Origin: Selaginella moellendorffii
Taxonomy: Eukaryota; Plantae; Lycopodiophyta
Length of the DNA: 64,000 nt
Direction: 5' to 3'
Assembly (NCBI RefSeq): GCF_000143415.4
Contig: NW_003314263.1
Location: 1,304,165 to 1,368,164 of the forward strand
Both the position numbers and the translations under genes were made by a program. The notes below the pieces were generated by a model. The model was not told the origin of the DNA. It searched no databases and saw only the letters and a program-made list of their open reading frames with translations. This document shows positions 1 through 27,147 of the stretch, in pieces. Each line of letters starts with the position of its first letter. The stretch's first letter is position 1.

Positions 1-1494
1 GGATGATCCGAAAGTTGATTCGAATGTGTCTGTAGGCATTCCTCCGAGAAAACGTGGTAAGGTAGTCGATTACGGAAACAAAGATGTGCTCCTCATCGGT
101 CTGGAAGACTAGAACCGAATAATCCGTGAGGCCCTGTCTCTGCAAAAAAAAAACAAGCAAAACAAGCAAAACAGTCGTAAATGAATCAAGCAAGGATGTT
201 TTCCAGCTTACCTGGAGGAAGTGCGTGTCCCGCTCAATCAAACAAAACAGCATGCGGTGAGAGAAACTTGTCAGCAGCAAAGGCGTTGTGAAATAGGCAT
301 CGCTCTCTGGAACACTGTACTTGATGAACCCCTTGAGATCATGGTGTATCGTTGTGGCTTGAAGAAAGCTCCTGGGAGGATCTGTGGCCTCAATGACAAG
401 GACGTTCAAACGTTCGCTCTCGCTGAAGGTCATCGGTGCGGGCCAGATCTATGACACGAAAAGCAATATGAGAAGTGCTTTCGAACTTTTTCAAGTGTTT
501 ATACCTCGTAAGCGCCCAGTATTATCGCGAACGATGTCTCCAGCTGCTGGGTGTACAGGAAGTAATCTTCTGCTATTCGTCGCAGCGCACTCATATCACG
601 GTGAGAAACCAGCTTCACGATGACTCGCTCGCTGGCAGTGGTGAAAAACTTCGCTCCACTCCTAGAGCTGGCCATCGTCCTCGGGCGTGCGGTGTTCAAC
701 GTTTCAACAAACTCCTTGTCATCCTTGAAGCCATGAACTTCCCGTAGAGTGCGAAACTGTGTGGGAAAGAGAACGTTGACGAATCCATCGATGCCCCCGA
801 ACGAGTACTCTGGCTTGTCCCCAGGAACTTGGTGCGTAAGGTACTTCGTGAGAACGGGAAGCCACTGCGGTGGGGGAGTCTGAAAACGAAAGTTTACGTG
901 AGCAGTGAGCAGTGAGTGAAGTTCCAAATCAAACCAAATGTACGCTGGTAGAGTTCTCGTTCACGATATTCTTCTGAAGGCGCTTCATCGCGCGGATCTG
1001 TTTGGGGAACACAGCCGTGACGTTGCCACTGCAATCAGCATAGAAACGAATCCGCATAGGATCGGCATAAGAAATCACGGGAAAGCTTGCAATCTCGACG
1101 AGTTAAATCTCGAGAATCCGCGTTAGGACCGGGATAAGAAGCAAGAAACCACTGGAAAGCTTGCAATCGGGATAAGAAGCAAGAAGTCTGTGGAGAAACA
1201 AAGTAGAAACCATGAATCGGGACAGCTCGGGGTCTAGGAAACGAGAAAGCACTAGAAAGCTTGCAATCGGGACAGGAAACACGAAATCTCTGGAGAGACA
1301 AGCGTCGAGAATGCATAATCACCATGAATCGAGAGAGAATCGGCAAGAAAGCTTGCATACCTCGCCCGAGACGATGGATCATGACAGTATCGCGTAGGCT
1401 CCCTGGCCATTGCCGCGTCGAATGCGACGCTGAGCAAGAATGGCGCAATCGCGACGCAGACGATCGCCATCGCGCAAACCATCGCCAGCGCCAT
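1..1494 (-). CDS. Divergent phosphatidylinositol-phosphate kinase (PIP5K/PIPK catalytic domain) with an N-terminal hydrophobic signal-peptide-like segment; 3' end lies beyond the window edge
   Basis: Hand-spliced GT-AG exons 1494-1361, 1028-944, 879-505, 448-212 and 139-<1 are all phase-compatible. Motifs in PIPK order: SRSGAKFF, VIVK, HDLKG, ERDTHFL, LTDYSVL, VIDYL. N-terminus is MALAMVCAMAIVCVAIAPFLLSVAFDAAMA. Confidence 0.8.
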
Positions 1495-1591
1495 CGCTCC
1501 GCAACCAAGGCATGCAAAATAAAACCCAAATTTCAAACGATGGATGGTACAAGTTAGCGCCAAAACCCCAAACGTACGGAAATGGGCCAAT

Positions 1592-2986
1592 GCTAAAATT
1601 AGTGGACGTTTTTAGGGTTCTTCGCGAGAGAGAGGGATGGATTCCAAGGTGCTACACCTTGTGCGCCATGGCCAGGCCTTCCACAACGTCCAAGGTGAGA
1701 TTCTACTGCAAATGAGGAGCTCCTGGAAGATTTTCCTGGACGGGAGATGGCGGCGCCTCACGCTCAAGCACATCTTGAGGGCTTTTCGATGCCTGTGGCT
1801 TCTCTTGTGCTGCATCGTTTCCCCAGCGCCTCCTCGTCCCTCCTCCTCCCCAGCTGCTGTGATGCCCATTTACTACGAGCACGCCGACGCGAGCCTCACG
1901 GCTACTGGATGGGAACAAGTAAGTCCTTTCCTTTCCCTTTGCTCCATTCATTTGGTAAATGATCGATCGCTCTCCTTCAAGGCTGAGTTTCTTCACAGGG
2001 AATTCAGGATTTCCGGATTGAGAGACCGAGTGGAGCTTGTTGTGGTGTCGCCCTTGACTCGGTAGTGTGATTTCTCCTCTCGAGAACTCTTCTAAGTTTG
2101 CCTTCCAGGACGCTCCAAACTGCATCTGGGATCTTTGGAGGAGGGAATTTCACTGATACCACTGATCAACTAGCAGCTCCTCTGATGGTAGACAACGTTG
2201 GACGGTGTCCACGACCAGCCATCTCCAGTGCAAACTCCCCTCCTTTCGTAGCACTGGAGCTTTGCAGGGAGAAATTGGTATGTTGGCTCTCCCATATTTT
2301 TTCTCTCTGTCAATGTAGCTAGTTGACGCGAAGTTTTGATGAACAGGGTACCATGCCATGCGATCAGAGGAGTCCCAGGAGCAAATCCGAAATTCAGTTT
2401 CCAGGGATTGGCTTTTCGAACGTAAGGATCATTCGACTCGATCGAGTTGTGTGACTTGATCCAACTCTGTTTCTCTTCTCTATCAGATCGAACAGGACCA
2501 GGACGAGCTGTGGAAGCCTGACAGAAGAGAACTAGAAGAGGAGCTCGACAAAAGGGCGAGAGCTTTTCTAGAATGGTACGTGGGCAGTCTGCGAAAGCTG
2601 TTGTAAGTTTCTGATCAAGCTTGCAGGCTATGGAGTCGTGGAGAGGAGGAGATTGCCGTCGTCTCCCACGCAGGCTTTCTGACCAACCTTGTGACAAAGT
2701 TTGGCGACGAAGCTGTGAACAAGACAGTGTAAGCGGCGTGTTTGGATGCTAGATTTGCTTGGTACTTACACTTGTGCGATTTAGGTTTGCGAACTGTGAG
2801 CTTCGTAGCGTGAGATTGAGGTGAGTCATCGTAGTTTTGTTCTCGAGACCTTAGATCTTGGCGTTTTTTTGCTCAGGAAAATAGTCACGGGCTCGGACTA
2901 CGCATTTGAGTTGACTGCAGCGTGAATCCATCCAAAGTGAGCCATGGATTCTGAAAGAGTTCTTTTGCTGACTTCAAGCTAGAAGC
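1592..2986 (+). repeat. Left arm of a ~1.4-kb inverted duplication (partner at ~22475-23863)
   Basis: Near-identical reverse complement including introns; mirrored ORFs appear in the ORF track (2170..2697- vs 22759..23286+). Confidence 0.95.
1637..2925 (+). CDS. Phosphoglycerate-mutase-like histidine phosphatase (copy 1, multi-exon)
   Basis: LHLVRHGQAFHNV (RHG catalytic His), DASLT..GWEQ, VVVSPLTRTLQTA, ALELCRE, HPCD-like HACD, EIAVVSHAGFL, FANCELRS. GT-AG introns; stop TGA at 2923-2925. Confidence 0.85.
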
Positions 2987-5431
2987 TCGCAGATTCGATT
3001 ATTAATTAAAATAACTTGAACGTTGCAGTATTTAAGCATGAATAATTTACCTTTTGCATATTAAAAATCTATAAAAAATGTCGAATTCATCATTGGAGTA
3101 CCTTATTAAGCATCAGATTCTATTCTCTGGAATTTAATCTAATATATTATGGATTTGACTAAACTTTTTTTGACAAGTTGAATTTCATTCTACATATTGC
3201 CCAATCAATAGTACATGCATCTACTAACATTTTTGGCTTGATATGAATAGTGACCAGTTTGATTTTAAGAAAAGACATCACATCTTGACCATTTGCAGAT
3301 TAGATTGAGCTGCTTTATGAACCCAGAAGAATTGTAACAACCAGCCGCTTGGTCCAGTCAATCTAGCCCCAGGCGACTCTAAGGCCTCGCCACCATGCTA
3401 AGTCCAGACCTTGTACTAGAGCCATCATGGGGTCACATCCTAGGAACACACGATAACCTTGGAGCCTACTGGACAATCCAACTTACGAACTTGGTATTAA
3501 CCACGACACTGGTTCCGAAAAAATCACCCAACTGAAGGCCTCATGACGTAACATTTCCTAACCATGAGCAGCTAGAGCTAACTCCCTACCGAGCGAGCAT
3601 GAAGTGGGAACCTTATACAACAAGGTCTGCATCGGGTTTCCATCCTCAATGTGTCTTCATTGCCTAGGTGTTAACAATCAGATAATCGGGTCTATCAGGG
3701 ACATCACAGCTCTTCCCACACACCTCACCTAGATTCACGGTATAGTCTAACCAACTCCTTGGTTGCCACCTCCCACTTTAGGGATTTGGTAACAAAGTCT
3801 TCACTTAGCCAGAGCTGCTCTCCACACCCTGCCTGGTCCATGTCTTTTGTTCATATGAAACTCATTTAAGCAAAATTGTTCTCCACAACTTCCCATATTA
3901 CAATTTGTTTCCAAGGAAGACTCAGTCTCCCTTCCAGACTACAATTATTCAACAGAGGCTTCTAATTCCACTTTCAGTTTCCAGAAAAGGAGGTCTCTTT
4001 TTTTGGTTTCCAAAGGCCTATACCCTCCGTTACTTCCTATACACCCCCCACGCTCTTCCTGTGGATCACACGACTGGGGCTTCCAGATTGTGAGGGGCCT
4101 GGGAGTGACATGCTGATGTGGCAGGACTCCTGCCACATCAGCTCAGACTACAATTATATTTTGAAGGCAGCTCCTTAGTATTACCAGTATTACTAAGTAA
4201 GTATTAAGTGAACGAGGACTCCTGCCATGTCACCAAACTATAATTAGTTAGGTGTCTTTTAGAGAAACTATGTTAATACAATAACGATCCAGCCGGGCAT
4301 TTGAGACACATATCCGTAACAAGAATGAATCATTTACAAATTCATATAGGCTACCAATGATTTATTATAACTCTTTTGAATCCGAAATTTACAATCAACT
4401 AAGCCCGAATGTAAAATTCAAATTACAAATCCTGCCAAACTACAAGTAGAATATTCTCCTTGTTCAATCAGTCAGTCCTAATGTGGGAGTGAAACATTGC
4501 AAGGATGAAGCACAATGCGAGATTGCAGGAGCTGGAAGCGTGGTATCCATGGAGTCAATGGAGTCCACCGAGCAAGTCAGGCACCTCTCCTTTGACGCTG
4601 AAAAAAATGTGTAGCTGGTGGAGCTGGAGCTGCTCCAGATCTCTGATTAGAATCTGCACGTCAGGTTTGGGAAATCAGAAGACCCCTCTGAAGCTACAAG
4701 AGATAGAATCTCCCAGCGAAGTATTTTGAAACCTCATGAGGCCTTTGATGAAACGTATGATCCTTACTATGAACTCGGAATTGGGCCTGTGTTTCCAGCA
4801 ATCTCTGTCTTTGGTGTCAAGCTCATGGACTCTGGCTGATTCATAAAGATTTCAGTAGAACTTGCAAATAAACTCAGAGCTTAGATTTTATACATACCCA
4901 TAAGAAAATTTGAGATCTTCACCAAATCTTGTAAGATTTAACTACTAAAGTGAGGATGAATGATATAGATTGTCGAGTATAGTGAATCCAAATGGAACAT
5001 CTAACCCTAATAAGTAAGGCGAAATGGATGTAATAATGGAGTGGCAAAAAAACTTGATCAGATGGACAGTCCAAAAAAATAGCATTACCATGCAAAACCT
5101 GTTGGTTTAGGGTACCACATACTCTGAATTTATTTGATGAACAAAATCACAGCACAGAAACATTGAAATTGAAAAAATATGCTTTTTTAGAGCTAATGAG
5201 GACTAAAATTCCCAGAATATTCTGCACACACGAAAATTGAAACTTACGTTTTTAGACTTGAAGGTTTTGGTGTTTAGCAAAATAATATTTAGAAAACTTC
5301 GGCCCAAGCTCAAAGAAATGTCGGACTCATTCCGGATTCCGCTTCAGGACCTCTTGCCAAGTGATTCCAGCCTACACTATGCATCAGGTGTGAAGTAATG
5401 TTTTTCTTCCTGCCCTTATCGTTCGAATTTC

Positions 5432-5670
5432 TTACGCAGGCTCACCTCGTAGTCGATTCACAGCTGATGTGTAAGTTCGAGCTTTGAACGTCCTGAGCTT
5501 AACATAACGAACCAAGCATTTCTTGCATCCTGCTATGTATATCCGATCGCCAGGGAAGAGTCTGTCCGGATCACTTGTGACGTTCATGTTGGCCTCAAAG
5601 ACATCATCCGCAGACAAACCGAAGTGAGCGAAGTGTTATCTCCTTTCACTTGAACAAACATTATAGCTCG
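5432..5670 (-). pseudogene. LysM-domain relic
   Basis: FGLSADDVFEANMNVTSDPDRLFPGDRIYIAGC matches the C-terminal two-thirds of a LysM motif. The N-terminal part (VQVKGDNT) is in another frame. Confidence 0.6.
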
Positions 5671-5799
5671 AGGTTATGATTTCTCAGAATCATAAAACCA
5701 ACGTCCACCAATAGCAAACTCCAAGAGCTCAACACACAAAACTAGAAGTAAAAAAGAGAAGGAAAAAAAAAAAAAAAACCAAAAGCGAACTTTGCGTGT

Positions 5800-7497
5800 C
5801 TACTTCCATGGGAAAGCCATGACAAACTGCTGAACTCGAGACATCGCCGGTAGCGCCTGCTGGTACGTGTCGCCATCATCTTTCTTATACTCTTGAAGGC
5901 TGTAGGTGTCGAACTTGGAGTCAGGAACCACGAAGATGAGCTTGTAGAGCCTTGGGATGGGCAGCTGCTTCTTCTCATGCCATATATCATACTCTTGCAC
6001 CACCTCCCATATTGCCGACCAGAAGAGTTTATGATTCCGGGAGACGGTATCCTGGAAGATGATGTCGGGAGTGAATAGTGAGTCGAAGGCCTTCTGAGTA
6101 GCAGAATACGGCTCCACAAAACAAGCCTCTGGGAGGCTTGCTAGGCCAGTGGCTACCTCGGCCCCTGGTCGCCTTGCATCCTCTGTGCTAGCTGTGTCCA
6201 TGTAGATATTGAAACCAGCTTTGTCCACCTGCTTTTTCTTCCTCCGCCCCGAACTGGTGCCCCTCTCATCAACCGGGATGTCGCTTGTGATTTCCCAGCG
6301 TCGCAACCGCCTAAAATGCTGTGGCTTAAGAGAAATAGATGGAGAGCAGCTTGAGCTTGGGCCATTGAGTGGCCTCATCTTGAACTCTCCACCTCCACTT
6401 CTGACCGTCTTGTGGAAGTGCCTCTCGAGAACCTTGCCTGCTAACGACTGGGCAGAAGGAATTTCCTGACAGAAGTCGAAGAAATCCTTGACTGCTTCAA
6501 AACCTTGTTCTTCGTAAAGATCGCACACCCTCTGCTCAATATACTCCGAGCCAAAGCACAGCTCCTTCTTTGTCACCCTGTAACAGTACCTCTCGTTCAA
6601 ATCCACCACGTTAGGAAGCTTATAATGCAGCAGATAGTCTGACAAGTCCGCACGTTTCTCCCCGTCCCCAGCTGCATGCCCGATTACTGCCTTCCAGTCA
6701 CTAGCACTTGACGCCGCGTTGTCCATTTCACTTTTCAACTTGGCCAGAGACATCTGCTCATCCAAGATTAAACGCGGCAGGCCCCCGCAGATCTCATAGC
6801 GCTGCTCGATGTCACGGTCACTGAATTCCAACTGCAGCTCATCTCTGCAAGCCTTCAAATCTTCCAAGCTCCAAGCTTCAAGGTGACAAAGGATGCCTGT
6901 GTCCTTGGAACACTCGTGATAGCCACGCCTGCCTGGGGAGACGCACTGAAGGAGAGGGCCGTAATGCCCTGCTACACCCCTGGATTCACCGTCGATTATC
7001 AGCCAGATGCTCTTCATAACCCAGGCCGGTGGAATCACATAGGCGAGTGACACCGAAACCAGGGGATCCTCCAAGGAGAAGTCGTAACACAGATAGAGTG
7101 GATTGTCGCCTTTGGTCCTCCACACCACCTTGTTCTTGAGCTTGGCTTGCTTGTACAACCAGTAATGTCCAAAGTAGCTCTTCCCAATCCCAGGCGTCCC
7201 CACAAGGTGAAAACTGAACCTCCGTACCCGTTTCCGCCTCTTGGGTGCTGTGTCCTTGTTTGCATCTACAGGAGTACCTGTTCCGGAGGCCATAATCAGT
7301 TGAATGTACTCCTCCAGAAGGTCGTAGTTTGGATGAACCCACAGCGGATGCAAAGATTCATCGCCCAAAAATCCCGAAGGTACGTCCAACACGCCATTTT
7401 CCACCTCTGCAGCAGCAACCTCCCTACCATAGATCGCATACGGCTCAATCGGAACAGCCACCGCTGCGACTGCCCCAGCCGCCGCTGCAGACGCCAT
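5800..7497 (-). CDS. Crinkler/RHS (CR)-type protein: P-loop CR-NTPase plus C-terminal restriction-endonuclease-fold (CR-REase) domain, intronless, 565 aa
   Basis: Walker A LVGTPGIGKS, Walker B WLIIDG, VSP, WSLEDL, YEICGGLPRLIL, FGSEYI, GKVLERHFH. REase-like part: P..ATQKAFDSL, IIFQDTVSRNH, KLIFVVP, VQQFVM. Basic NLS-like patches PKRRKRVRR and RRKKK. Confidence 0.8.
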   Translation of the reverse strand: MASAAAAGAVAAVAVPIEPYAIYGREVAAAEVENGVLDVPSGFLGDESLHPLWVHPNYDLLEEYIQLIMASGTGTPVDANKDTAPKRRKRVRRFSFHLVGTPGIGKSYFGHYWLYKQAKLKNKVVWRTKGDNPLYLCYDFSLEDPLVSVSLAYVIPPAWVMKSIWLIIDGESRGVAGHYGPLLQCVSPGRRGYHECSKDTGILCHLEAWSLEDLKACRDELQLEFSDRDIEQRYEICGGLPRLILDEQMSLAKLKSEMDNAASSASDWKAVIGHAAGDGEKRADLSDYLLHYKLPNVVDLNERYCYRVTKKELCFGSEYIEQRVCDLYEEQGFEAVKDFFDFCQEIPSAQSLAGKVLERHFHKTVRSGGGEFKMRPLNGPSSSCSPSISLKPQHFRRLRRWEITSDIPVDERGTSSGRRKKKQVDKAGFNIYMDTASTEDARRPGAEVATGLASLPEACFVEPYSATQKAFDSLFTPDIIFQDTVSRNHKLFWSAIWEVVQEYDIWHEKKQLPIPRLYKLIFVVPDSKFDTYSLQEYKKDDGDTYQQALPAMSRVQQFVMAFPWK

Positions 7498-8057
7498 TTC
7501 CTAGCTTCTAGAACCCGGTGTACATAGTTTACATAAAACTTCAGTTTAGGACTTAAGGCACAATCATAACAGAATTGTGAGATGCGTTTAGTTTATCGAG
7601 CTAGCTACAAGCTGACGGAATTTGTCTGGCAAGTGAGCCTCGTAATCTTCCAATCGATCCCTAACCTTACCACTTTCCCAGCGGACGAGCGTGGACGCCG
7701 TGAATCAATCCTCAAAGGATGATCAGAAACTCGCCATGCCGTTTTGTCGCCCACATTCACTCTCACCAATGTCGTCGGCTTCTCAATTCCTCGTAGATCA
7801 CAGATTCACCTCGCACACAATCTGATTCAATCCATCCCAGAATCATTCAATCATTCAATCAATCAAATTTCAGCTGGGCACCAGCTGCGTCCAAGCGACG
7901 GCACAATCTCTCCCACAAACAGGATCAACAACGGCCTCCCCTCGCCTCCCCTTGCTTCTCAAGAACGGCATCAAGCTCCGACACGCTCGTGTCCACAATC
8001 ACCATCACCCACAAACCACCCGATCGCGTTCTTCCACCATTCTCACGCTTCCAAAGA

Positions 8058-11000
8058 TGTAGCACGTAAGCCGTCGGATCCTTCTCATCCAGCTCCACCA
8101 ATCTCTCTTACGCGATCTTCCCCACCTCCACATTCTTCCACTTGTGAAGTTGTGACACGCCCCAAGAATCGCAGTCCAAGTCAGGCTCGATCGGCATCTA
8201 ATTCACCAATCTCAGCGCCTCGCTCAGGAAATTCGCCCGCCCCAGAAGATCCACAATGCAGTTGTAGTGGATGATGTTGGGAATCACTCCGTATTTGTTC
8301 TGCATCTCCTCCAGGAAATCCTTGCCTTTGCAAGTCAGCCCCATGATTGCAAGCCGAAAGAAGATGAGTGAGCGTGATCTCGTTGGGGACGACTCCTGAC
8401 TTCTCCTTCATACGCTCAAACATCTCCAAACTCTGCTTCCAATCCCCCATTTGGCTGTAGCCACTCAGAAGCGCATTCCAGCTGCACAAATCCCTCGCAG
8501 ATATCGAGTTGAAAACCATCTTCGCAGCTTCCATGCTTCCACATCTCCCGTAAAAATCCACCAAGCAAGTTGCCACCGGAACATCCTCTTCCAGCCCGCA
8601 GCTCTGAATCTCCCTGTGGAAGAACTTACCAGTTCCAGCTGTTGAAGTGAAATCTGTTGTTCTTGCTCTGCTTTTCTTTCATGGTATTAGAGATCAGTTT
8701 CTGAATTCTTTCTTCTCCTTTCTTTGTGTCTCACATCATGAGCTGCAGCAAAGTTGGATTGATCTTGCTACAGGGAGTCACTGCCTTTGATGGGAGGAGA
8801 GGGTTCAACACCTGGTCCGAGAAAGTGATGCGTGTGCTGCAGATGGAAGAACTCTGGGAAATCGTTTCACCATCGACAATCACTGCAGATGCCCATATGC
8901 GACGAACCCCTGCTGCGTTGGGAGCTTCAACTTCGGTGGAAGGAGAAGTCGTGGATGAAGAGGCAATTCGTGCCTCTATTGCAGCAGCTCGACAACAGCT
9001 TGATCCTGGGAACAGGCTGTGCTGGAGAAGAAGGAATCTCGAGCAAAAGAATTGATTCTTTCTAAGCTTGCAGATGCCCTTATGATGCGTTTGCGTCATA
9101 AGAGTGCTTGTGAGATTTGGGCTCATTTTCACAACAAGTATGCTGTTCTTTCCCTCTCCAAGATTAGCATGGTCGAGACTTGCATTCGTGAGACCCATTT
9201 TCATCCAGGCGAGAACTTTGAAGAGTTCCTCGCCAAGATGCAAGACCTGTGGATGGAGCTTGAAGGCAGTTTAGTGGCATTCAACGAAAACAAGAAAGTT
9301 TTGGTGCTTTGCGAGGGCATACAAGATTTTTCTTTTAGTTCTTTTGTCCCTACCGTTCACATGATGTCACTCAACTTTGAACAAGCTGAGCAAACTTTAT
9401 GCTCAGAGCTGGCTGCGAGAGGTTTGATTGTGGACTTTGATCAGAGGCCTTCTCATGTTTTAATCTCACAATCTACATCAAATGTTTTTGCATCAAGCGA
9501 TCAGTCAGGGATTGATTCAGCTCTGTGGGCTGGAAATCATCAAGGCAGAGGAGGCCACGGAAGAGGAGGATGGCAGAGGTCGCAGGTTTAGGGGAAATCC
9601 GCAGAAGCAGCAGCACAATTCAAGGAATTCTGGTAAAGAAGCAGCAGTTTGAGATTATTTTGTGGGCAAGAACAAACAGGAATGCTGGACCTGTGGGATG
9701 CCAGGACACTACTCCAAGGATTGCCCAGTTGCAGCTTGGCTGCAGCACATGAACATAGGGCTCGCAGTAAATGCTCACGAAGGGGAAATATAGGAACTTG
9801 CAGCATCATCTGAGATAGTAATTTCAAACGTTTCTGAAAAACTAGGTTCAGAGAGACACCTAATGCAAAGATGGTTGAACTTTATGCAGTTGCGTGCTGC
9901 GAAAGTGAAGTGCATTCGTATGGGAGATGGAAGCATTTTACCTGTTCGCGCAACTAGGGATGTGCGAGTTCCACTGGGAAGAAAGTCTCTACTCTTGAAG
10001 AATGCGTGGTATGTTCCAAAGATAGTGAAGAATCTGGTTTCTATAGCCAGGTTTATGGATGAAGGTTTGGATGTGAATTTCTCCAAACATCAATGTCAAG
10101 GTCTTGCAAATGGTCGTCCATTACTACATTTTCCTAGATATGTTTGAGAAGGAGATAGCTTCTGGAAAAAATTTGAACGCTCCTGAGATGTGCATGACTG
10201 TAGATAGTTCTCTCTAGCATGCTCGACTTGCACATGCCAATCCCCCTCTCATCAGGCGTATGCAGAAGCAGGAGCTTGTGGATGGCTTTAACAACCACAT
10301 TCTTCAAAGTTCAGTGAAATGTCACACTTGCATTCTTGGTAAGCAAACCCATTGTACTTTCAAACCTGCTGTGATCAGAAGCACTCGTCCCTTGCAGCTC
10401 GTTCACTCAGATATTTATGGACCCATGCGACTGTTTGCTCAGAATGGTGCAAAGTGTTTTATGATGTTTACTGATGATTTCTCCAGGCACATGGACGTCT
10501 TCTTCCTTTGTCACAAAGATGAAGTCTTCAGCAAATTCAAGCAATTTGTAGCAGAAGCCGAAGTGAAAACTGGTCAAAGGGTTGGTTGTTTATGTACTGA
10601 TTCAGGAGGGGAATACATCAACAAGTCCTTTCAGCAGTTCTGTGTTGAACGAGGAATTCTTCATCAACGCTCTTGCTCTCATACCCCTCAACAGAATGGA
10701 GTCTCTGAGCGCAAGAACAAGACAATCATGAACACAGTTTGGTGCTTCCCTCAAGAATCAGGACTATCAAAATTCCTCTAGGCTGAAGCAGTTGGATCAG
10801 CTGTGCACGTTCAAAACCTCCTCCCTCATTCTCGCAATCCCAACAAGATCCCAAAAGAGCTTTGGACTGGTCAAAGACAATCAGTGGTGCATCTCAGGTG
10901 TTTTGGTTGTTTAAGCTTTGCAAAAAGGGTTGATGAGCATCTCGGTAAGTTGGAGAGCAGAAGCAAGCTGGCATTTCTTGTTGGATACGACTCCAATTCA

Positions 11001-14000
11001 AAAGGATATTGCCTGTACCAGCCTGGTAATCATCAAATTTTTGTAAGCACTGACGTTCGTTTTGATGAAGGAACACTATAAAGATTGCGAAGGAAGCTCG
11101 GATCAAAATGTGAAATGGAGTTGGGATGGTGTTGAAGACGTTGATGAAGATGACGATGATCTAACAATCATCTATCCCTCATCTCCTTCAGCTGACAATC
11201 ATCCAACACCAGTCTCTGGATCTTTTCTTCCTGAAGAACAGGGCGATGCTGCTCATCGTGCACAAACTGGAGAAGTCGACAAGCTCACACATGATCTACC
11301 ATTCAACATGGAGAACTATGGGTGAACATCATCTGGATGATCAAGCAAAGCACCTCATCCCAAGCAGTGGTCTTTTGCAGCAATAGAAATAGCTTCTGAA
11401 CTAGTCAACTTTAAGCAGGGGATTCAAGGTCCTGATGCAGATAAGTGGATTTCAGCAATGCAAGATGATTTGAATTCTCTTGATGAGAACCAGACTTATG
11501 ACTTGGTGGAAGCTCCTGAAGGATGTGAAGTTGTCAGATCGCATTGGGTGTTCAAGCTTCACAGAAATGATCAGTTTAGTGTTACAAGGCAAGACTTGTT
11601 GCTCAAGGATATTCACAAATTCTTGGAGTGGATTTTGATGAGATGTTCTCACCAATTGTGAAGTAGACAAGCATGAAACAGCCTTTCTTAATGGGAACTT
11701 GAAGGAGGAGATATTTATGCAGCAACCCCCAGGCTTTGAGCTTTTTGGATCACAGCGCTCTGAACTCGTCTGCAAGCTTTGCAAGGCTCTTTATGGCCTT
11801 AAGCAGGCTTCCCATCAGTGGTATGAATATTTGAATTCTTTTCTTATGGGTCTCATTATGCAGAGGTTGAACAGCGATGGAAATCTATATCTTCTTCAGC
11901 AGGGTGATCACTTTGTTGTGATGGCAGTTTATGTGGATGACTATTTGATTGTCAACAACAATGACACTGTTTTGAAGGATGTGAAGATCAAACTCATGAA
12001 CAGGTTTGTGATGAAGGATTTAGGAGCTGTGTGGCAGCTGTTAGGATGGAAGTTGACAGGGATGAAGCAGACAGGACAATCATCCTCACACAACGCCAAT
12101 ATGTGAAGAAGCTTCTCAACCAGTTCAACATGACAAGTTGCAAATCTGTGGCTACACCAATCATCACTGGCATCAAGTTCAGAAGTAAGATGGATGATTT
12201 ATTTGATTAGCCCTCGGTCTACCGATTGCTTGTTGGAGGACTACTCTATCTCATCAACATGACTTGCCCCGACATCTGCTTTGCCGTTGGTCTCCTCAGC
12301 CGATACATGCAGTTTCCAAGTTTTTGTCATTGGCAAATGGCAAAAAGAGTTTTGAGGTATTTGAAAGGACAAGCTGCTCATGGATTGGTTTACAAATGCT
12401 CAGGTCAGTCCAAACTTGTTCTTCAAGCTTATTGCGATGTAGATTGGGCTGGCAACTTGAATACACGACATTCAACCTCTGGAATTTGCTGTGTAATTGC
12501 TGGTGCTGCGGTTTCATGGGGAAGTAAGAAGCAAATGATGGTTGCTCTTTCCAGTGTAGAAGCAGAGTACGTAGCTGCCAATACAGCAGTAAGGGAGATC
12601 ATCTGGCTTCTTCGATTACTTGGAGAACTCAATCAACAACAATCAGATGCGACCATTCTACATTGCGACAGCAGAAGTGCAATCGCCATGTCAAAAAATC
12701 CTGTGTTTCATGCTCGTACAAAACATATAGATGTGCAGCATCACTTCATTCAAGAACGTGTAGCAGCCGGAGATCTTCATCTGGAATACATTCCTTCACA
12801 GTATCAGTTGGCAGACCTTCTAACCAAGCCACTTTCAGAGTTCACATTCATCAAGCTGAGGAATCAACTTGGAGTGTCAAGCGCCCTCAACTTGAAGGGG
12901 GAGTGTAAGAATAATGATGAACACAACAAGCAAGACAATTTATATCAGAAACAGTCCGAATAGCGATCAGATCTCTGGTGATTTCCGATTTGATTGAAGT
13001 TGTATATATATACAGCCATACATGAATCAAGGTGCGTGTTAAAGTGAAATCCATTGTTCTTGCTCCGCTTTTCTTTCACCAGCAGCCATCAAACTTCCGC
13101 AGGCCGTGAGTGCAGCTACAAATGTCGCAGAGTTCATTGTCACCCCGTTCAGATCCATCTCACACACCACCTCCAGAGCTCGTTTGTTCTTCCCATTGTC
13201 GACATATCCCTGTATCAAGCACGTCCATGAAACAACGTTCCGCTTCACCATCTTGTCAAAAACTTCTTGAGCTTCCGCCATACTGCCACACTTGGCGAGG
13301 AGATTCACCACTACAGTCTCCACGTAAACGTCCCAGCATCTGTTCCTCACTGCTTGAAGATGAATCCTCTTGCCTTTCTCTAACCAGTGATTCAAGCATT
13401 TCTGCTCGGCTGCCAAAGCAGTGCAGGCTGTGATTGCAGTGACGAAAGTTCTAGCAGCCGGAGGAGCTTCAGCTTCTTCGGCCATGCCTTCGAACAGTTT
13501 CAGTGCGACTTCGCTCTTCCCGTTATCAACGTATCCTTGCATCAGAGCAGTCCAGAAAACCACGCTGCAGCTGCTCATCTTGTCGAGTGACAAGCAGCTG
13601 CTGCGACAACATTTTCGTCCAGAACACGCTGGTGGATATGTATGCCAAGCTTGGCAAAATGCAGCAGGCCCGTGACGTCTCACCCGGGAATGAATCGACT
13701 TTCCTCTTTTCAGCCAGTTGCAGCTTCCCACAGCCCTCGCTGCTAACGAAGTGCAAGCAGTCAGTGGAGCAACGAAAGTTCTAGCGTTGGGGATTGTCGA
13801 ACTCATACCGTCAAAAAGCCTCAGAGCGAGCGCACTCTCGCCGTTGTCAACGTAACCTTGCAGAAGAATCGTCCATGAAACCGCATTACCATGCAGCCGC
13901 ACCTCGCATAAAGATCAATCAGCGCATTCTGCACGAAGGAGTTGTCGGAGCAGTTCTTTTCCAGTGCTTGCCGATAGATTTCTTCTCCCTTTTCTAACCA

Positions 14001-21780: not shown

Positions 21781-22530
21781 ATGGTCAAAACCATATGTGC
21801 TACAATTCCGAGCTTGATCTGCTCCAATATATTTGGCTTCACACGAAGTAAGAGGCTTTGAAAACGAATGCCAAATTGCATTATTGGCTCAAATGGCCCT
21901 TGACGAAAATGATGCAATTGTTAGAAGGCATCATCACTATCGTCAGCATGTCTAAATGTGCATTTAAAGACATCCGAAAGAACACTTCAATTCTCGCGAG
22001 TGGCTACACTCAAACTATTGTACCACTTGAGCACCATCCCTTGGAGACACGTGAAAACTCACGTAAACATCAAGCATCATCCCAAAAATGATATATGGCA
22101 ATCATTGTGAAGTGATCAAACTAATGATACATATCATCCCTAAGATTCCCACAAAAGAACTTCGGCTAAACTCAAAGATTAGTATTAAGAGCAAGAGAAG
22201 CTATACCATGTACTGTGAATGCTGCCATCAACTAAGTTTGGTTGTTCAATTGCAATCACATAACATCAAGCAATTGCACCAACTATTGTTTCAGAGTCAA
22301 ACAAATCAATTGAATCTTACAATGTTTATAAATTATAAACATGTTTACAAATTATTTAATTATTTTTACATTATACTCTCCCTTAAATATATTTTAAATT
22401 ATTTTCTGCCTAGATATATCATCATAAATTAACTTTTCCCTAGCTAAATATAGATACGTTTTAAGATCTAAAATTGCTTCTAGCTTGAAGTTAGCAAAAG
22501 AACTCTTTCAGAATCCATGGCTCACTTAAT

Positions 22531-23823
22531 TCACGCTGCAGTCAACTCAAACGCGTAGTCCGAGCCCGTGACTATTTTCCTGAGCAAAAAAACGCCAAGA
22601 TCTAAGGTCTCGAGAACAAAAACACGATGACTCACCTCAATCTCACGCTACGAAGCTCACAGTTCGCAAACCTAAATCGCACAAGTGTAAGTACCAAGCA
22701 AATCTAGCATCCAAACACGCCACTTACACTGTCTTGTTCACAGCTTCGTCGCCAAACTTTGTCACAAGGTTGGTCAGAAAGCCTGCGTGGGAGACGACGG
22801 CAATCTCCTCCTCTCCACGACTCCATAGCCTGCAAGCTTGATCAGAAACTTACAACAGCTTTTGCAGACTGCCCACGTACCATTCTAGAAAAGCTCTCGC
22901 CCTTTTGTCGAGCTCCTCTTCTAGTTCTCTTCTGTCAGGCTTCCACAGCTCGTCCTGGTCCTGTTCGATCTGATAGAGAAGAGAAACAGAGTTGGATCAA
23001 GTCACACAACTCGATCAAGTCGAATCATCCTTACGTTCGAAAAGTCAATCCCTGGAAACTGAATTTCGGATTTGCTCCTGGGACTCCTCTGATCGCATGG
23101 CATGGTACCCTGTTCATCAAAACTTTGCGTCAACTAGCTACATTGACAGAGAGAAAAAATATGGGAGAGCCAACATACCAATTTCTCCCTGCAAAGCTCC
23201 AGTGCTACGAAAGGAGGGGAGTTTGCACTGGAGATGGCTGGTCGTGGACACCGTCCAACGTTGTCTACCATCAGAGGAGCTGCTAGTTGATCAGTGGTAT
23301 CAGTGAAATTCCCTCCTCCAAAAATCCCAGATGCAGTTTGGAGCGTCCTGGAAGGCAAACTTAGAAGAGTTCTCGAGAGGAGAAATCACACTACCGAGTC
23401 AAGGGCGATACCACAACAAGCTCCACTCGATCTCTCAATCCGGAAATCCTGAATTCCCTGTGAAGAAACTCAGCCTTGAAGGAGAGCGATCAATCATTTA
23501 CCAAATGAATGGAGGAAAGGAAAATCGAAATGGTGACTTACTTGTTCCCAGCCAGTAGCCGTGAGGCTCGCGTCGGCGTGCTCGTAGTAAATGGGCATCA
23601 CAGCAGCTGGGGATGAGGAGGGACGAGGAGGCGCTGGGGAAACGATACAGCACAAGAGAAGCCACAGGCATCGAAAAGCCCTCAAAAAGTGCTTGAGCGT
23701 GAGGCGCCGCCATCTCCCGTCCAGGAAAATCTTCCAGGAGCTCCTCATTTGCAGTAGAATCTCACCCTGGACGTTGTGGAAGGCTTGGCCATGGCGCACA
23801 AGGTGTAGCACCTTCGAATCCAT
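22531..23823 (-). CDS. Phosphoglycerate-mutase-like histidine phosphatase (copy 2, inverted)
   Basis: Near-identical to 1637-2925: RHG motif and the same exon structure; stop at 22531-22533. Confidence 0.85.
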
Positions 23824-23934
23824 CCTTTTCTCGAAGAACCCTAAAAAACGTCCACTATTTTAGCTCTTTCCGTGGCGCCAATTTTAAATTGCCAATCTAG
23901 GTTTGATATTTTGCCATTGCCCCGATTCGGGGGC

Positions 23935-24160
23935 GATGGCTATGGCGATGGCGCGATGGGGATAAGCTTGGGATTCGATGTGGCAATGGTGAGCCGACGA
24001 GATACTGCCGTGATCATGCAAGGTATGCTAGAGAGCTTTTGTTGTTCTGGCATTGATTCTATTCCGTAAGGTGAAGTGTTTTAGGGCAATGTGACTGGGA
24101 TAGTTCGCAAGGACATTAGAGCGATGAAAATCCATCACAATATCGTGGAGGGTGTTTAGA
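23935..24160 (+). pseudogene. Decayed 5' exons of a paralog of the signal-peptide PIP5K-like gene
   Basis: gattcgatgtggcaatgg..gagccgacgagatactgccgtgatc..ag|gtatgc parallels exon 1. GNVTGIVRKDIRAMKIHHNIV parallels exon 2 (GNVTAVFPKQIRAMKRLQKNIV). Confidence 0.65.
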
Positions 24161-24708
24161 TGGATTTTCATCCTTCGGATGTCTTTGTTTAGCTTTTCCA
24201 GCGGATTTACTGTAATTTGGAGCTTCGCACAAGCTTTGTTATCAAGGCATCTGCGAGGTATGGTGAGGTACTTTGTAGATTTGTGTGCCTGTTGGTACCA
24301 ACAATTTTAATAGCTTTTTACTCTCTTGAGAAACAGCTACGTCTCTATGTCTCACTCACGCACTCTTTTTGCCTGGTGAGCTGAGGAACTTGTGGCAATT
24401 ATTATAGCTGGAACTTACGTTTCCACTGGTTTTTGCGGGGATCCCTAATGCGTTTGGGTGCTTGAGAACTATTTCTTTCCACAGACGAGGTAAGCATATA
24501 GATCTTACAGTACTGATGTCTTCTTTGGGACAGCTAACGAGCTCCACATGCCAGGCCAAGTGGTACTTGCTGCGCTCATTTACATCCAAACTATATGCCT
24601 CGGTCGTGAAGAAATATTTCATAGCGCGACTGAAGCACCGATGCTCGTCCCTTGTCCGGGGGCGCCCGAAAGAAAGAAAGTATCTGCTCAGCACGCTTTT
24701 CACGTCCC

Positions 24709-27147
24709 ATGGCGGTTTGCTCTTTCGTGATTCTCCTGATGATTGGTGCCGTTACTCCATCGTTTACGCAGGATCAAGGCGCAGCGCCCCTCAACTCGAC
24801 ATGGATACTCGACGGCTCCTCGTCGCGCATTGTCCTCTCAGTGCCCGATGCAAAGTTCCCAGTTTTCGCCGGCTTTCTCCCCACTTGCGACCACTGCCCC
24901 AGGCCCCGGTATTACTTCTCGGTCTTCTTCCAGGATCCGAGCTCCAACCAGAGCACGCAGGTTGTATGGCGAGCAGGCCTCCCGATTTCCGAAGGTGGTA
25001 TGCTCAGCTTGACCGCAGATGGAAACTTGGTGCTATACAGAGATGGCCATGCGAAGAGTCCAGTGTGGTCGACAGGCACCGCCAGGAAAGGAGTCCTAGA
25101 AATGAGGCTAGACTATACCGGCAACTTGCTGCTCAACAAGGCCAAATATGATGGCACCGCCTGGCAGAGCTTCCGGAACCCGACCGACGCGCTGCTGCCG
25201 ACGCAAAATCTAGAGTCAGGAACGAGCATGGTTTCTAACAGCGTCCAAGAGGCGGAGGGGTTCCAAGGCTACTTCACGCTCGAGGTGAGAGTCTCGGAAA
25301 TAGTGATGACCGCCCAGGCGCCGGTGGCGCCTCAAATCTACAAACTGTGGAGAAATCCGAGTAGCCTCGACGTGGGTGACATGTCTCTCGAGTCTGGCTG
25401 CCAGCTCAAGATCTACACCACAGACGGGCAGCCCTGCTGGTCGACGCCATCTTTTTGTATCGACTCGACAACGCTGGAGGTGCTGAGGATACACCCCGAC
25501 GGGACATTGCGCTATGACAACCAGCCCGAAAAAGCCTCGGTGTATCTCAACGCGTTGCTCTTCGATGACGTAGAGGCTGTAAGCATCGGGGCTTGCGGGA
25601 AGAAGAGCGTCTTCGACGTGGAAACCAGGAAGTGTGGCTGTCCGCTGCTACAAGGCGAGAGATCATACTTCCAGCAGCTTGATCCGGCCGATGCTTCCAA
25701 AGGGTGCCAGCCTTGGGAGCCGGAGGACCCGTGTGACGGACTGTATAACTCGTCAAACCACGTCATGCTCCAAGCGGCTGGCTTCTACAACTACGCGCCG
25801 CTGCGATTCATGGCAGCCAACGAGGGAGACTCGTGCGTGAGCTCCTGCTTGGAGGACTGCGCTTGCAAGGCGGCGTTTGTCTCTAGCAACTCGTCCGCGA
25901 CGTGCTTCCGAGTGACCGAGTTCTACACGCTGCGCGGCAGCAGCTACAACACAACGCCGTCGTTCAAAGCGTTTCTCAAGGTTGAAAAGAAGAGACCATC
26001 CGCTCCAGAGATAATCGTCAAGCCTCAAGTCAGACCCCCTACCGGCGGCTGGAGCTCCAACGTCCAAGCCATCCTCATTGGCGTCTTCATGCTGCTCTTG
26101 GCGATGGCGACGGCAATGGTGACGTTCATCACTTTCTACTGGAAGAGAGCTAGCGACGCTGTGGACCAGGGCCAGGCTTTGTCGTCCGAGCTACCTCGGC
26201 CCTTCTCGCTGCACGAGCTGGAGGTGGCGACCGAGAAGTTTAGCAGGGAGATCGGGAGCGGGGGATTCGGATCGGTCTTCGAAGGTGTTCTTGCGGACGG
26301 GAGCCGGGTGGCCGTGAAGCGCGTGAGCGACTCCAAGCAAGTCCACAAGTTGTTTGAAGCCGAGGTGGTGGCCATCATCAGCATCCACCACAAGAACTTG
26401 GTGCGGCTCCGGGGATTTTGCTGCCCGAACTTGCTCGTCTACGAGTTCGTCGCCAATGGTTCTCTCGACCGCTGGCTGTTTGATGACGACAAGTTCCTGG
26501 ACTGCGATGCCAGATACTCGATCGCTCTCGACATCGCTCGGGGACTGTCCTACCTCCACGACGGATGCCGGACGAGGGTGCTACACTTGGACATCAAGCC
26601 GCAGAACATACTGCTGGACGAGAAATTTCGAGCAAAGATCTCCGACTTTGGGCTCTCGCGGCAAGGCGAGCTTCAAGCGGTGGACGAGATGGTCATCCGG
26701 GGGACTCCGGGATACATGGCTCCGGAGTGGCTCCACTTCCAGATTAGTGACAAGCTCGACACTTACAGCTTTGGAGTGGTGGTGCTGGAGATGGTCACTG
26801 GCAAGCCTGCGTGCTCTCCTTGCGGATCGAAGTTCCTGGCTGGAGGAGTTCTTGAGATGTCTCAAAAAAGGCCAGTAGTGGAGATCATGGACAAGAGGAT
26901 GAACTTTTCTTCACAATGTTTCAAGAAGATGGAGAAGCTGCTGAGAATTGGATTGTGGTGCGTCCAGAGTGATCCCGGCCAGAGACCATCGATGGGATAT
27001 GTCACGAAAATGCTGGAGGGATCCTTGGAAACAGTGGACGCTCCTCCAATCCCTCCCAAATCTCGCGCCGGGAAGGAGGAGGCAATCGACATGAGATCGT
27101 GCTCTTTGAGTGACATTGTGAGAGTTCATGTAGATCAACGGCTGTAA
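24709..27147 (+). CDS. G-type (B-lectin/S-domain, PAN) receptor-like Ser/Thr kinase, non-RD, intronless (RLK-A1)
   Basis: Signal peptide; B-lectin motifs (VVWRA, LTADGNLVL, WQSF.NPTD.LLP); PAN CxxxCLxDCxC; TM helix; GSGGFGSV, VAVK, HLDIKPQN, DFG, GTPGYMAPE. Confidence 0.95.
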   Translation: MAVCSFVILLMIGAVTPSFTQDQGAAPLNSTWILDGSSSRIVLSVPDAKFPVFAGFLPTCDHCPRPRYYFSVFFQDPSSNQSTQVVWRAGLPISEGGMLSLTADGNLVLYRDGHAKSPVWSTGTARKGVLEMRLDYTGNLLLNKAKYDGTAWQSFRNPTDALLPTQNLESGTSMVSNSVQEAEGFQGYFTLEVRVSEIVMTAQAPVAPQIYKLWRNPSSLDVGDMSLESGCQLKIYTTDGQPCWSTPSFCIDSTTLEVLRIHPDGTLRYDNQPEKASVYLNALLFDDVEAVSIGACGKKSVFDVETRKCGCPLLQGERSYFQQLDPADASKGCQPWEPEDPCDGLYNSSNHVMLQAAGFYNYAPLRFMAANEGDSCVSSCLEDCACKAAFVSSNSSATCFRVTEFYTLRGSSYNTTPSFKAFLKVEKKRPSAPEIIVKPQVRPPTGGWSSNVQAILIGVFMLLLAMATAMVTFITFYWKRASDAVDQGQALSSELPRPFSLHELEVATEKFSREIGSGGFGSVFEGVLADGSRVAVKRVSDSKQVHKLFEAEVVAIISIHHKNLVRLRGFCCPNLLVYEFVANGSLDRWLFDDDKFLDCDARYSIALDIARGLSYLHDGCRTRVLHLDIKPQNILLDEKFRAKISDFGLSRQGELQAVDEMVIRGTPGYMAPEWLHFQISDKLDTYSFGVVVLEMVTGKPACSPCGSKFLAGGVLEMSQKRPVVEIMDKRMNFSSQCFKKMEKLLRIGLWCVQSDPGQRPSMGYVTKMLEGSLETVDAPPIPPKSRAGKEEAIDMRSCSLSDIVRVHVDQRL

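What the first reader, a model, noticed from the sequence alone, without database searches (positions are those of the whole stretch)
1..1494. PIP5K-fold lipid kinase with an apparent secretory signal peptide
Seen: five phase-compatible exons encode a minimal PIPK catalytic domain with the key Lys and the DLKG, (M/T)DYS and IDY Asp residues intact. It is preceded by a hydrophobic N-terminus ending in an AxA-type site and N-glycosylation sequons (NVT, NST). There are no MORN repeats and almost no insert. Established: characterised PIPKs are cytosolic or peripheral membrane enzymes acting on the cytosolic leaflet. Inference: this may be an ER-luminal, secreted or signal-anchored PIPK-fold kinase with a different substrate (inositol phosphate, GIPC/GPI inositol, glycan or protein).
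Basis: partly seen in the sequence, partly recalled or inferred. Interest (0 to 1): 0.78.

Follow-up and report, generated by a model that had tools for sequence, protein, structure and literature searches.

The report
Stand-alone FAB1-type lipid-kinase domain with export-like start
A spikemoss (Selaginella moellendorffii) gene, present in several copies and weakly expressed, encodes only the catalytic domain of a FAB1/PIKfyve-type phosphoinositide kinase behind a hydrophobic, signal-peptide-like start; this layout is not described for plant PIP kinases, and whether the enzyme really enters the secretory pathway is untested.

Summary
Window 1-1494 (minus strand) carries five exons of a real, spliced, weakly expressed gene of Selaginella moellendorffii (GL377567.1; annotated product P0008, 412 aa). 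RNA contigs confirm all four introns, including the exon 1-2-3 joins. One correction: exon 2 ends at 935, not 944. The gene runs about 140-400 nt past the window's left edge.

The product passes Pfam PIP5K (49 bits against a cut-off of 27) and keeps the G-loop, K165, DLKG, TDYS and VIDY motifs. Its nearest kin are FAB1/PIKfyve kinase domains, not MORN-type PIP5Ks. It has no FYVE, CCT or MORN part.

The family has three copies on this scaffold, plus an allele on another scaffold and a decayed remnant in the window. The scan already noted one near-identical copy 40,395 nt upstream (s1-402870). Old paralogues give dN/dS 0.23 at dS 0.78, so the kinase has been kept by selection. No relative with this layout turned up in three large protein searches.

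The start is a 24-residue hydrophobic stretch with a Pro break and small residues at -3/-1. A natural allele has Glu in its middle. This fits a cleavable signal peptide better than a membrane anchor, but topology is unproven. The two sequons are at chance level, and the first 50 nt of the coding sequence lack direct RNA cover.

The parts
1361..1494 (-). Exon 1: ATG at 1494-1492 and codons 1-44 plus 2 nt. The hydrophobic segment (residues 2-25) lies at 1491-1420. Candidate cleavage sites follow A24 and A30. The first 13 codons lie in a degenerate 6/18-nt tandem repeat.
   Evidence: Sequence; joint 1361|1028 in an X1 RNA contig that reaches 1444; hydropathy; tandem repeat at 1455-1497
1029..1360 (-). 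Intron 1 (332 nt, GT..AG), holding internal direct repeats of about 67 nt (1135-1201 and 1235-1301, 82% identical)
   Evidence: RNA joint; self-blast
935..1028 (-). Exon 2: linker, with sequons N47 (1024-1016) and N70 (955-947)
   Evidence: RNA joints 1361|1028 and 935|879
880..934 (-). Intron 2 (55 nt). In the allele on GL377662.1 the first donor base (window 934) is G>C, and its gene model uses the donor at 943 instead.
505..879 (-). Exon 3: Pro-rich end of the linker and the kinase N-lobe, with the G-loop SGAKF and the ATP-binding Lys165 (615-613)
   Evidence: Translation; Pfam PF01504 26.4 bits for the exon alone; RNA contig covers 515-879 with no mismatch
449..504 (-). Intron 3 (56 nt)
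   Evidence: RNA joint 505|448
212..448 (-). Exon 4: hinge and the start of the C-lobe, with DLKG (340-329) and a short variable insert
   Evidence: Translation; RNA contigs in X1 and X3
140..211 (-). Intron 4 (72 nt)
   Evidence: RNA joint 212|139 in X1; X3 loose end matches the start of exon 5
1..139 (-). Exon 5, first 139 nt: TDYS (127-116), VIDY with Asp305 (67-65), and the start of the activation loop. The exon continues 136 nt beyond the window edge.
   Evidence: Translation; mapping of P0008 on L004; the X1 contig runs 206 nt past the window start
1495..1636 (.). Shared 142-nt head-to-head intergenic region (likely a bidirectional promoter) with the His_Phos_1 gene. An out-of-frame upstream ATG sits at 1513.
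   Evidence: Many molecule ends of the neighbour's RNA at 1634/1637; sequence
1637..2986 (+). Neighbouring histidine-phosphatase (His_Phos_1) gene. It is highly expressed and has been co-duplicated with every copy of the kinase gene.
23930..24150 (+). Decayed remnant of exons 1-2 of a further copy. The hydrophobic core is deleted, and there is a stop and a frameshift. It lies next to an inverted 96.8%-identical duplicate of the His_Phos gene (22476-23864).
   Evidence: tblastn; blastn; sequence

Best explanation
This is an intact, spliced, weakly expressed Selaginella moellendorffii gene (product P0008) belonging to a small family found so far only in this species. It encodes, in order, a 24-residue hydrophobic N-terminus, a linker of about 70 residues, and the catalytic domain alone of a FAB1/PIKfyve-type (type III) phosphatidylinositol-phosphate kinase. 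Shown: the exon structure, expression, PIPK membership, intact ATP-binding and catalytic residues, several copies, long-term purifying selection, and recent gene conversion of the 5' half. Inferred: the enzyme is active and still works on an inositol-lipid head group at a membrane surface, because the activation-loop region remains basic and looks amphipathic in both old paralogues. Also inferred: the hydrophobic start sends the nascent chain to the ER and most likely acts as a cleavable signal peptide or an N-in/C-out signal anchor. That would place the kinase domain on the luminal or extracytosolic side. The hydrophobic start seems to have arisen from a GC-rich ATGGCG-like tandem repeat and replaces the FYVE-based membrane recruitment of true FAB1.
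For: Splicing and expression: X1 and X3 contigs support all four joints, and one contig spans exons 3-2-1. Identity: L004 equals the window, and P0008 equals the spliced model. Family: PF01504 scores 49.2 bits against a cut-off of 27. PIKfyve 7k2v_P scores 55 bits, PIP4K2A 31.6 and PIP5K1A 22. The best exhaustive-search hit, P0004, is an exon of a FYVE-Cpn60_TCP1-PIP5K gene. The IDY..TF and P..YR.R motifs line up with FAB1. Motifs are intact. Selection: dN/dS is 0.225 at dS 0.78 over 169 codons between the window copy and the P0001 copy, and both keep DLKG, TDYS and IDY. The allele differs by about 3 non-synonymous codons against 5 synonymous sites. Signal-like start: hydropathy is about 2.5 over residues 1-25. 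Pro18 is followed by SVA|F and AMA|R. The 15-residue flank after the segment has net charge -1. The basic region 312-340 has net charge +5, and +6 in the paralogue. The A17E allele is hard to fit with a membrane-spanning helix but fits a 15-residue h-region. The X1 contig ends at 1444 and 515 sit next to variant sites 1445 and 514. These ends therefore look like assembly-graph branches, not a transcript start.
Against: No signal-peptide or topology predictor was available, and there are no experimental data. A 24-residue, very hydrophobic segment with a one-residue N-tail can also insert N-out/C-in, as in P450-type anchors. PI3P-type substrates and most known PIPK biology lie on the cytosolic leaflet. 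The two sequons are at chance level. No ER-retention motif is present. No orthologue exists to test whether the start is conserved, because all full copies share an identical, gene-converted exon 1. RNA does not directly cover 1445-1494. Expression is very low, with 0-2 reads in two deep RNA runs. The structure model failed (pLDDT 39).
Confidence: 0.42

Rival explanations
1. The protein is an N-terminally anchored, cytosol-facing lipid kinase. The hydrophobic stretch is an uncleaved type III (N-out/C-in) anchor that tethers a FAB1-type catalytic domain to ER or endomembranes. It replaces the lost FYVE domain, and the enzyme still phosphorylates PI3P or PI on the cytosolic leaflet.
For: The hydrophobic stretch is 24 residues long with hydropathy about 2.5 and almost no N-terminal tail. 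Catalytic residues and a basic activation-loop region are conserved under purifying selection, as expected for work on an acidic cytosolic leaflet. Transmembrane-tethered PIPKs with cytosolic kinase domains are known (GPCR-PIPKs; PMC3823935, PMC5784254). A loss of FYVE and CCT needs some new membrane-targeting device.
Against: No cluster of positive charge follows the segment: Asp26 comes first, and the flank is net -1. Pro18 breaks the helix. The A17E allele puts Glu-Pro in the middle of the would-be membrane span. Canonical small -3/-1 sites follow the hydrophobic core.
Confidence: 0.3
2. The protein is a soluble cytosolic stand-alone PIPK domain. Transcription starts inside exon 1, or scanning is leaky, so translation begins at Met29 (ATG 1410-1408). 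The hydrophobic stretch would then be untranslated leader derived from a GC-rich repeat.
For: RNA contig cover stops at 1444, so 1445-1494 is not directly supported. Met29 has a good start context, with A at -3 and G at +4. The stretch is encoded by a degenerate tandem repeat. One allele carries a charged residue within it.
Against: The contig end at 1444 sits exactly beside the variant at 1445, just as the other end at 515 sits beside 514. This points to graph branching, with RNA continuing upstream. ATGs at 1494, 1482 and 1470 all have G at -3 and +4, and all give a hydrophobic start. Any transcript start upstream of 1468 therefore yields that start. The annotated models of four loci all begin at this Met. 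Exon 1 differs from the allele less (1 in 134) than the 5' flank does (8 substitutions in 206).
Confidence: 0.12
3. This is a young, dispensable duplicate family with no specific role: a by-product of segmental duplication that is barely expressed and on its way to decay.
For: Expression is very low in the raw RNA runs. One copy in the window is already a remnant. No relatives were found outside this species. The region is a patchwork of duplications and gene conversion.
Against: dN/dS is 0.225 at dS 0.78 between old paralogues, with every catalytic motif kept. Reading frames and splice sites are intact in three copies and one allele. Spliced transcripts appear in two studies.
Confidence: 0.1

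Closest known systems
FAB1 / PIKfyve (type III PIPK, PI3P 5-kinase) kinase domain
   Same: It is the best match among solved structures (7k2v_P, 55 bits, E=5.9e-14). The motif order is shared: G-loop, IxK, DLKG, xDYS, IDY..TF, and a C-terminal P..YR.R helix. The best exhaustive-search hit is an exon of a FYVE-Cpn60_TCP1-PIP5K gene.
   Different: The FYVE, CCT/Cpn60_TCP1 and conserved Cys-rich regions are all absent, and the protein has about 376-412 residues instead of more than 1,400. It has a hydrophobic N-terminus, DLKGF instead of DLKGS, and about 25-38 extra residues in the activation-loop region compared with a compact FAB1. Identity to FAB1 domains is only about 30-38%.
Type IV transmembrane PIPKs (GPCR-PIPKs: Dictyostelium RpkA, Phytophthora GKs, ciliate PIPK2)
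   Same: A PIPK catalytic domain is fused to N-terminal membrane-inserting sequence. One ciliate member also carries a signal peptide (PMC3823935).
   Different: Those proteins have seven transmembrane helices and a cytosolic kinase domain, and they are reported absent from plants (PMC5784254). Here there is one hydrophobic segment only, in a land plant, and the kinase domain is FAB1-like.
Plant type I/II PIP5Ks (Arabidopsis PIP5K1-11)
   Same: They share the Pfam family PF01504 and the same catalytic motifs.
   Different: There are no MORN repeats and no linker or dimerisation domain. The match to type I structures is much weaker (22 bits).
Secretory-pathway kinases (Fam20C, four-jointed, VLK, POMK)
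   Same: This is a functional analogy only, and only if the luminal reading is right: a signal peptide or signal anchor followed by a kinase domain that uses luminal ATP.
   Different: Those enzymes have the protein-kinase-like fold, belong to other families, and are not related in sequence. No similarity to them was sought or found here; this comparison rests on general knowledge.

Membership tests
PIPK catalytic domain (Pfam PF01504, PIP5K) | Whole-protein score above Pfam's gathering cut-off | tested here: met
   P0008 scores 49.2 bits against a cut-off of 27, E=5.7e-13. Exon 3 alone scores 26.4 bits.
PIPK catalytic domain (Pfam PF01504, PIP5K) | Gly-rich loop and the ATP-binding Lys of the IIK motif | tested here: met
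   SGAKF at 150 and IVK with K165 align to GGKSGAAF and ILK of PIKfyve.
PIPK catalytic domain (Pfam PF01504, PIP5K) | DLKGS, MDYSL and IID catalytic/Mg-binding Asp motifs | tested here: met
   DLKGF at 238, TDYSV at 285 and VIDY at 303 are present and conserved in paralogue P0001. Ser to Phe after DLKG is a departure from the consensus.
PIPK catalytic domain (Pfam PF01504, PIP5K) | PIPK three-dimensional fold | tested here: inconclusive
   AlphaFold2 with a 7-sequence alignment gave pLDDT 39. The model was too poor for a fold search, though the predicted N-lobe strands and helices are in the expected order.
PIPK catalytic domain (Pfam PF01504, PIP5K) | Lipid-kinase activity | not testable with these tools
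   Needs a recombinant enzyme assay.
FAB1/PIKfyve orthologue (type III PIPK) | FYVE, CCT (Cpn60_TCP1) and CCR regions upstream of the kinase domain | tested here: not met
   PF01504 is the only Pfam hit. The 95 residues before the domain have no family or Atlas match.
FAB1/PIKfyve orthologue (type III PIPK) | Kinase domain closest to type III rather than type I/II | tested here: met
   55 bits to PIKfyve against 31.6 and 22 to types II and I; hit P0004 lies in a FAB1-type gene. No tree was built.
Type IV GPCR-PIPK | Seven-transmembrane receptor domain N-terminal to the PIPK domain | tested here: not met
   There is a single hydrophobic segment at residues 2-25.
Plant type I PIP5K | MORN repeats and a long variable insert | tested here: not met
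   No MORN hit. Only 47 residues lie between the start of DLKG and the start of TDYS.
Cleavable Sec signal peptide | n/h/c layout with small residues at -3 and -1 | tested here: inconclusive
   By hand: h-region 2-17, Pro18, then SVA|F (24/25) and AMA|R (30/31). The n-region has no basic residue, and the hydrophobic run is long at 24 residues. SignalP and DeepTMHMM were not available.
Cleavable Sec signal peptide | Translocation, cleavage and glycosylation of the passenger | not testable with these tools
   Sequons N47 and N70 exist, but at chance frequency (2 seen, 1.7 expected).

The most novel reading that the evidence does not exclude
A land plant makes a PIPK-fold (FAB1-type) kinase whose catalytic domain sits in the lumen of the secretory pathway or outside the cell. 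There it would phosphorylate an inositol lipid on the non-cytosolic leaflet (PI, GPI intermediates or GIPC) or another luminal substrate. This would be the first luminal member of the phosphoinositide-kinase families.
Probability: 0.3. Interest if true: 0.8.

Novelty: new variant of a known kind. Interest (0 to 1): 0.5.

Why it matters
All characterised PIP kinases act from the cytosol, and transmembrane PIPKs are reported absent from plants (PMC5784254). A selected, expressed plant gene that joins a bare FAB1-type catalytic domain to an ER-targeting start means one of two things. It may be a new way of tethering a PI(3,5)P2/PI5P-type kinase to endomembranes without a FYVE domain. Or it may be a PIPK-fold kinase working on the luminal side. 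The second case would open the question of phosphorylated inositol lipids on the non-cytosolic leaflet. Interest is tempered because the family seems confined to one species, expression is low, and topology and activity are untested. The locus is also a clean example of a gene-conversion mosaic: 1.2 kb identical, introns included, next to a stretch with dS 0.78.

Tried and rejected
(1) Exhaustive phmmer of exon 3 against 1.84 billion representatives gave 6 hits. One is the paralogue. Two are false: P0002 has only an alphavirus-E2-like low-complexity hit, and P0003 is a bacterial 'cellulase'. The other three are weak fragments of ordinary PIPK or FAB1 proteins.

(2) A word search with P0001 and a profile search with alignment A1 found only the Selaginella copies and P0006. 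No signal-peptide PIPK clade was found. Sensitivity is limited by word matching and by the length window of 227-721 aa.

(3) AlphaFold2 on a 7-row alignment gave pLDDT 39, so I ran no fold search. MAFFT misplaced the FAB1 C-lobe fragment in alignment A2, so I dropped that row.

(4) The ESM Atlas search on the whole protein returned only generic PIP5K clusters. Residues 1-95 gave no usable hit.

(5) The weak tblastn hit at 23991-24147 looked like a possible divergent paralogue that could test conservation of the start. It is a decayed remnant and says nothing about constraint.

It is the near-identical copy P0007, so it gives no independent support.

(7) A contig end at 1444 could have marked the transcript start. 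I rejected this because both contig ends abut variant sites.

(9) Paper searches found no paper on this protein or on Selaginella PIPKs. The rice 'OsPIPK-FAB' is an ordinary 1,610-aa FAB1.

Full report
**What is there**

On the minus strand of window 1-1494 lie five exons: 1494-1361, 1028-935, 879-505, 448-212 and 139-1. I laid public runs on window 1-3000. Contigs of run X1 carry the joined forms 1361|1028, 935|879, 505|448 and 212|139, all GT..AG on the minus strand. One 543-nt contig spans exons 3, 2 and 1, and X3 supports exon 4 and its join to exon 5. These spliced forms show that the contigs are RNA. Exon 2 ends at 935, so Val-His-Leu is included; the simpler donor at 944 is not used in this copy.

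Two deep raw RNA runs (X15, X16) show almost no reads on the gene, whereas the neighbouring gene is covered 50-150-fold. Expression is therefore real but low.

**Identity of the locus**

The spliced translation (326 residues inside the window) equals the start of annotated protein P0008 (412 aa). The locus of P0008 is L004, on Selaginella moellendorffii scaffold GL377567.1, assembly GCA_000143415.2. L004 is identical to the reverse complement of window 1-11494 with no mismatch. The window therefore begins at about GL377567.1:1,304,165.

Exon 5 continues 136 nt past the window edge. Two further small 3' exons are annotated, but one of the introns is only 40 nt long. Without that splice the frame ends shortly after the last kinase helix, at about 376 aa. 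Either way the catalytic domain is complete.

**Family**

P0008 passes Pfam PIP5K (PF01504) at 49.2 bits against a cut-off of 27. Among solved structures the PIKfyve kinase domain is clearly the best match: 7k2v_P, 55 bits, E=5.9e-14. PIP4K2A scores 31.6 bits and PIP5K1A 22 bits.

The closest protein in the exhaustive search, P0004, is one exon of a FYVE-Cpn60_TCP1-PIP5K gene, that is, a FAB1 of some eukaryote. The motifs SGAKF(150), K165, DLKG(238), TDYS(285) and VIDY(303), and the C-terminal HPRNYRAR helix, are all present. They line up with FAB1.

There is no FYVE, CCT or MORN part. So this is a bare type III (FAB1/PIKfyve-like) catalytic domain, not a type I PIP5K. Compared with a compact FAB1 it carries about 25-38 extra residues in the activation-loop region. 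That region has net charge +5 in this copy and +6 in the old paralogue.

**Copies and selection**

Scaffold GL377567.1 holds three full copies:
- P0007 at 1,261,869-1,263,770. This is the earlier scan note s1-402870, exactly 40,395 nt before the window.
- P0001 (SELMODRAFT_404223, UniProt D8QUN4) at 1,290,684-1,292,407.
- P0008, the window's copy.

An allele, P0009, lies on GL377662.1. Each copy sits head to head with a His_Phos_1 gene. The window also holds an inverted 96.8%-identical duplicate of that neighbour (22476-23864), with a decayed remnant of exons 1-2 beside it.

P0001 and the window copy are 100% identical from window 1700 to 515, promoter and introns included. Beyond that they drop to about 85% identity, which marks a recent gene-conversion tract. 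In the unconverted 169 codons, dS is 0.78, dN is 0.175 and dN/dS is 0.225, with every catalytic motif kept. The allele differs in exons by about three amino-acid changes and five silent sites. The kinase domain has therefore been under purifying selection for a long time, and this is not a decaying fragment.

**Relatives elsewhere**

Three searches were run: an exhaustive phmmer of exon 3, a word search with P0001 and a profile word search. They found only the Selaginella copies and weak fragments of ordinary PIPKs. Two of the six exhaustive hits are false positives.

I found no signal-peptide PIPK clade outside this species. The limits are these: the only exhaustive query was a single exon, and the word searches see only proteins of 227-721 aa. 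No paper mentions the protein. Transmembrane PIPKs are known only as seven-helix GPCR-PIPKs with cytosolic kinase domains (PMC3823935). That class is reported absent from plants (PMC5784254).

**The hydrophobic start**

Residues 2-25 are uniformly hydrophobic, with mean hydropathy about 2.5. The AlphaFold2 model predicts them as a helix, but that model is unreliable overall. The first 13 codons lie in a degenerate ATGGCG-like tandem repeat, which suggests the stretch arose de novo.

Four features favour a cleavable signal peptide or an N-in/C-out orientation:
- Pro18 splits the stretch into a 16-residue core and a 7-residue tail.
- Small residues occupy -3/-1 at SVA|F (24/25) and AMA|R (30/31).
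- The first residue after the stretch is Asp, and the 15-residue flank is net -1.
- The natural allele has Glu17 next to Pro18. That fits a 15-residue h-region but fits a membrane span poorly.

Four points count against, or are neutral:
- The run is long and very hydrophobic with a one-residue N-tail. This can also give a P450-type N-out/C-in anchor.
- The two sequons (N47, N70) match chance expectation (1.7).
- There is no retention motif.
- The conserved basic activation-loop region fits work on an acidic, usually cytosolic, leaflet.

Because exon 1 is identical in all full copies through gene conversion, and the remnant is a pseudogene, no independent test of constraint on the start is possible.

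**Is the start translated?**

The RNA contig reaches only to 1444, so the ATG at 1494 is not directly covered. That end, however, abuts the allelic variant at 1445. The contig's other end at 515 abuts the first paralogue difference at 514. Both ends therefore look like assembly-graph branches rather than transcript ends.

The ATGs at 1494, 1482 and 1470 all have G at -3 and +4, and each would give a hydrophobic start. Only a transcript start between 1445 and 1467 would make Met29 the first AUG. The neighbour's RNA 5' ends lie at 1634-1637, which leaves a 142-nt shared promoter region. I put about 0.12 on the 'not translated' rival.

**Verdict**

My best reading (0.42) is an active, membrane-surface lipid kinase that enters the ER by a signal-peptide-like start, so that its catalytic domain faces the lumen or the exterior. 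The main rival (0.30) is a cytosol-facing N-terminal anchor that replaces FYVE-based recruitment. Either reading is a new variant of a known kind for plants. The fully novel luminal reading, including a luminal substrate, gets about 0.3.

Noticed in passing
window 1592-2986 (+) and 22476-23864 (-): The highly expressed His_Phos_1 (phosphoglycerate-mutase-like) gene is present twice in the window as an inverted duplicate at 96.8% identity. Every copy of the kinase gene in the assembly has such a neighbour head to head.
   Followed up: partly
window 23930-24150 (+): This is a remnant of exons 1-2 of a further kinase copy. It keeps the ATGGCT/ATGGCG start, GNVT and IRAMK, but has lost the hydrophobic core and carries a stop and a frameshift. 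It is far more diverged than the adjacent His_Phos duplicate, so gene conversion seems to have refreshed only the neighbour.
   Followed up: partly
window 515-1700 against L001 9795-10990: A 1.2-kb tract (promoter, exons 1-3, introns 1-2) is 100% identical between the window copy and the P0001 copy. From 514 leftwards identity falls abruptly to about 85% (dS 0.78). This is a sharp gene-conversion or recombination boundary inside exon 3.
   Followed up: yes
window 1634-1637: Many RNA molecules of the His_Phos gene end at 1634 or 1637, at or within 3 nt of its annotated ATG (1637). This gene seems to have almost no 5' leader, or its true 5' ends are under-sampled.
   Followed up: no
window 1918 to 1982 or 1999: The His_Phos gene has a minor alternative acceptor: the read-supported joint skips 80 nt instead of 63 in about 4-6% of reads in both raw RNA runs.
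   Followed up: no
window 1135-1201 and 1235-1301: Intron 1 of the kinase gene holds direct repeats of about 67 nt (82% identical) built around a recurring 'cccgattgcaagctttc' motif. The remnant copy has only about 70 nt between its exon 1 and exon 2 traces, so the intron seems to have grown by internal duplication.
   Followed up: no
window 24652-27147 (+): This is an intronless B-lectin / S-domain receptor-like kinase ORF (831 codons as listed from a TTG). Similar B_lectin-Pkinase genes flank the allelic locus on GL377662.1.
   Followed up: no
L003 10561 (equivalent to window 934): In the allele on GL377662.1 the intron 2 donor is GT>CT. Its annotated model uses the donor 9 nt upstream and then reads through later introns to give a 525-aa product, which is probably a mis-model.
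   Followed up: partly
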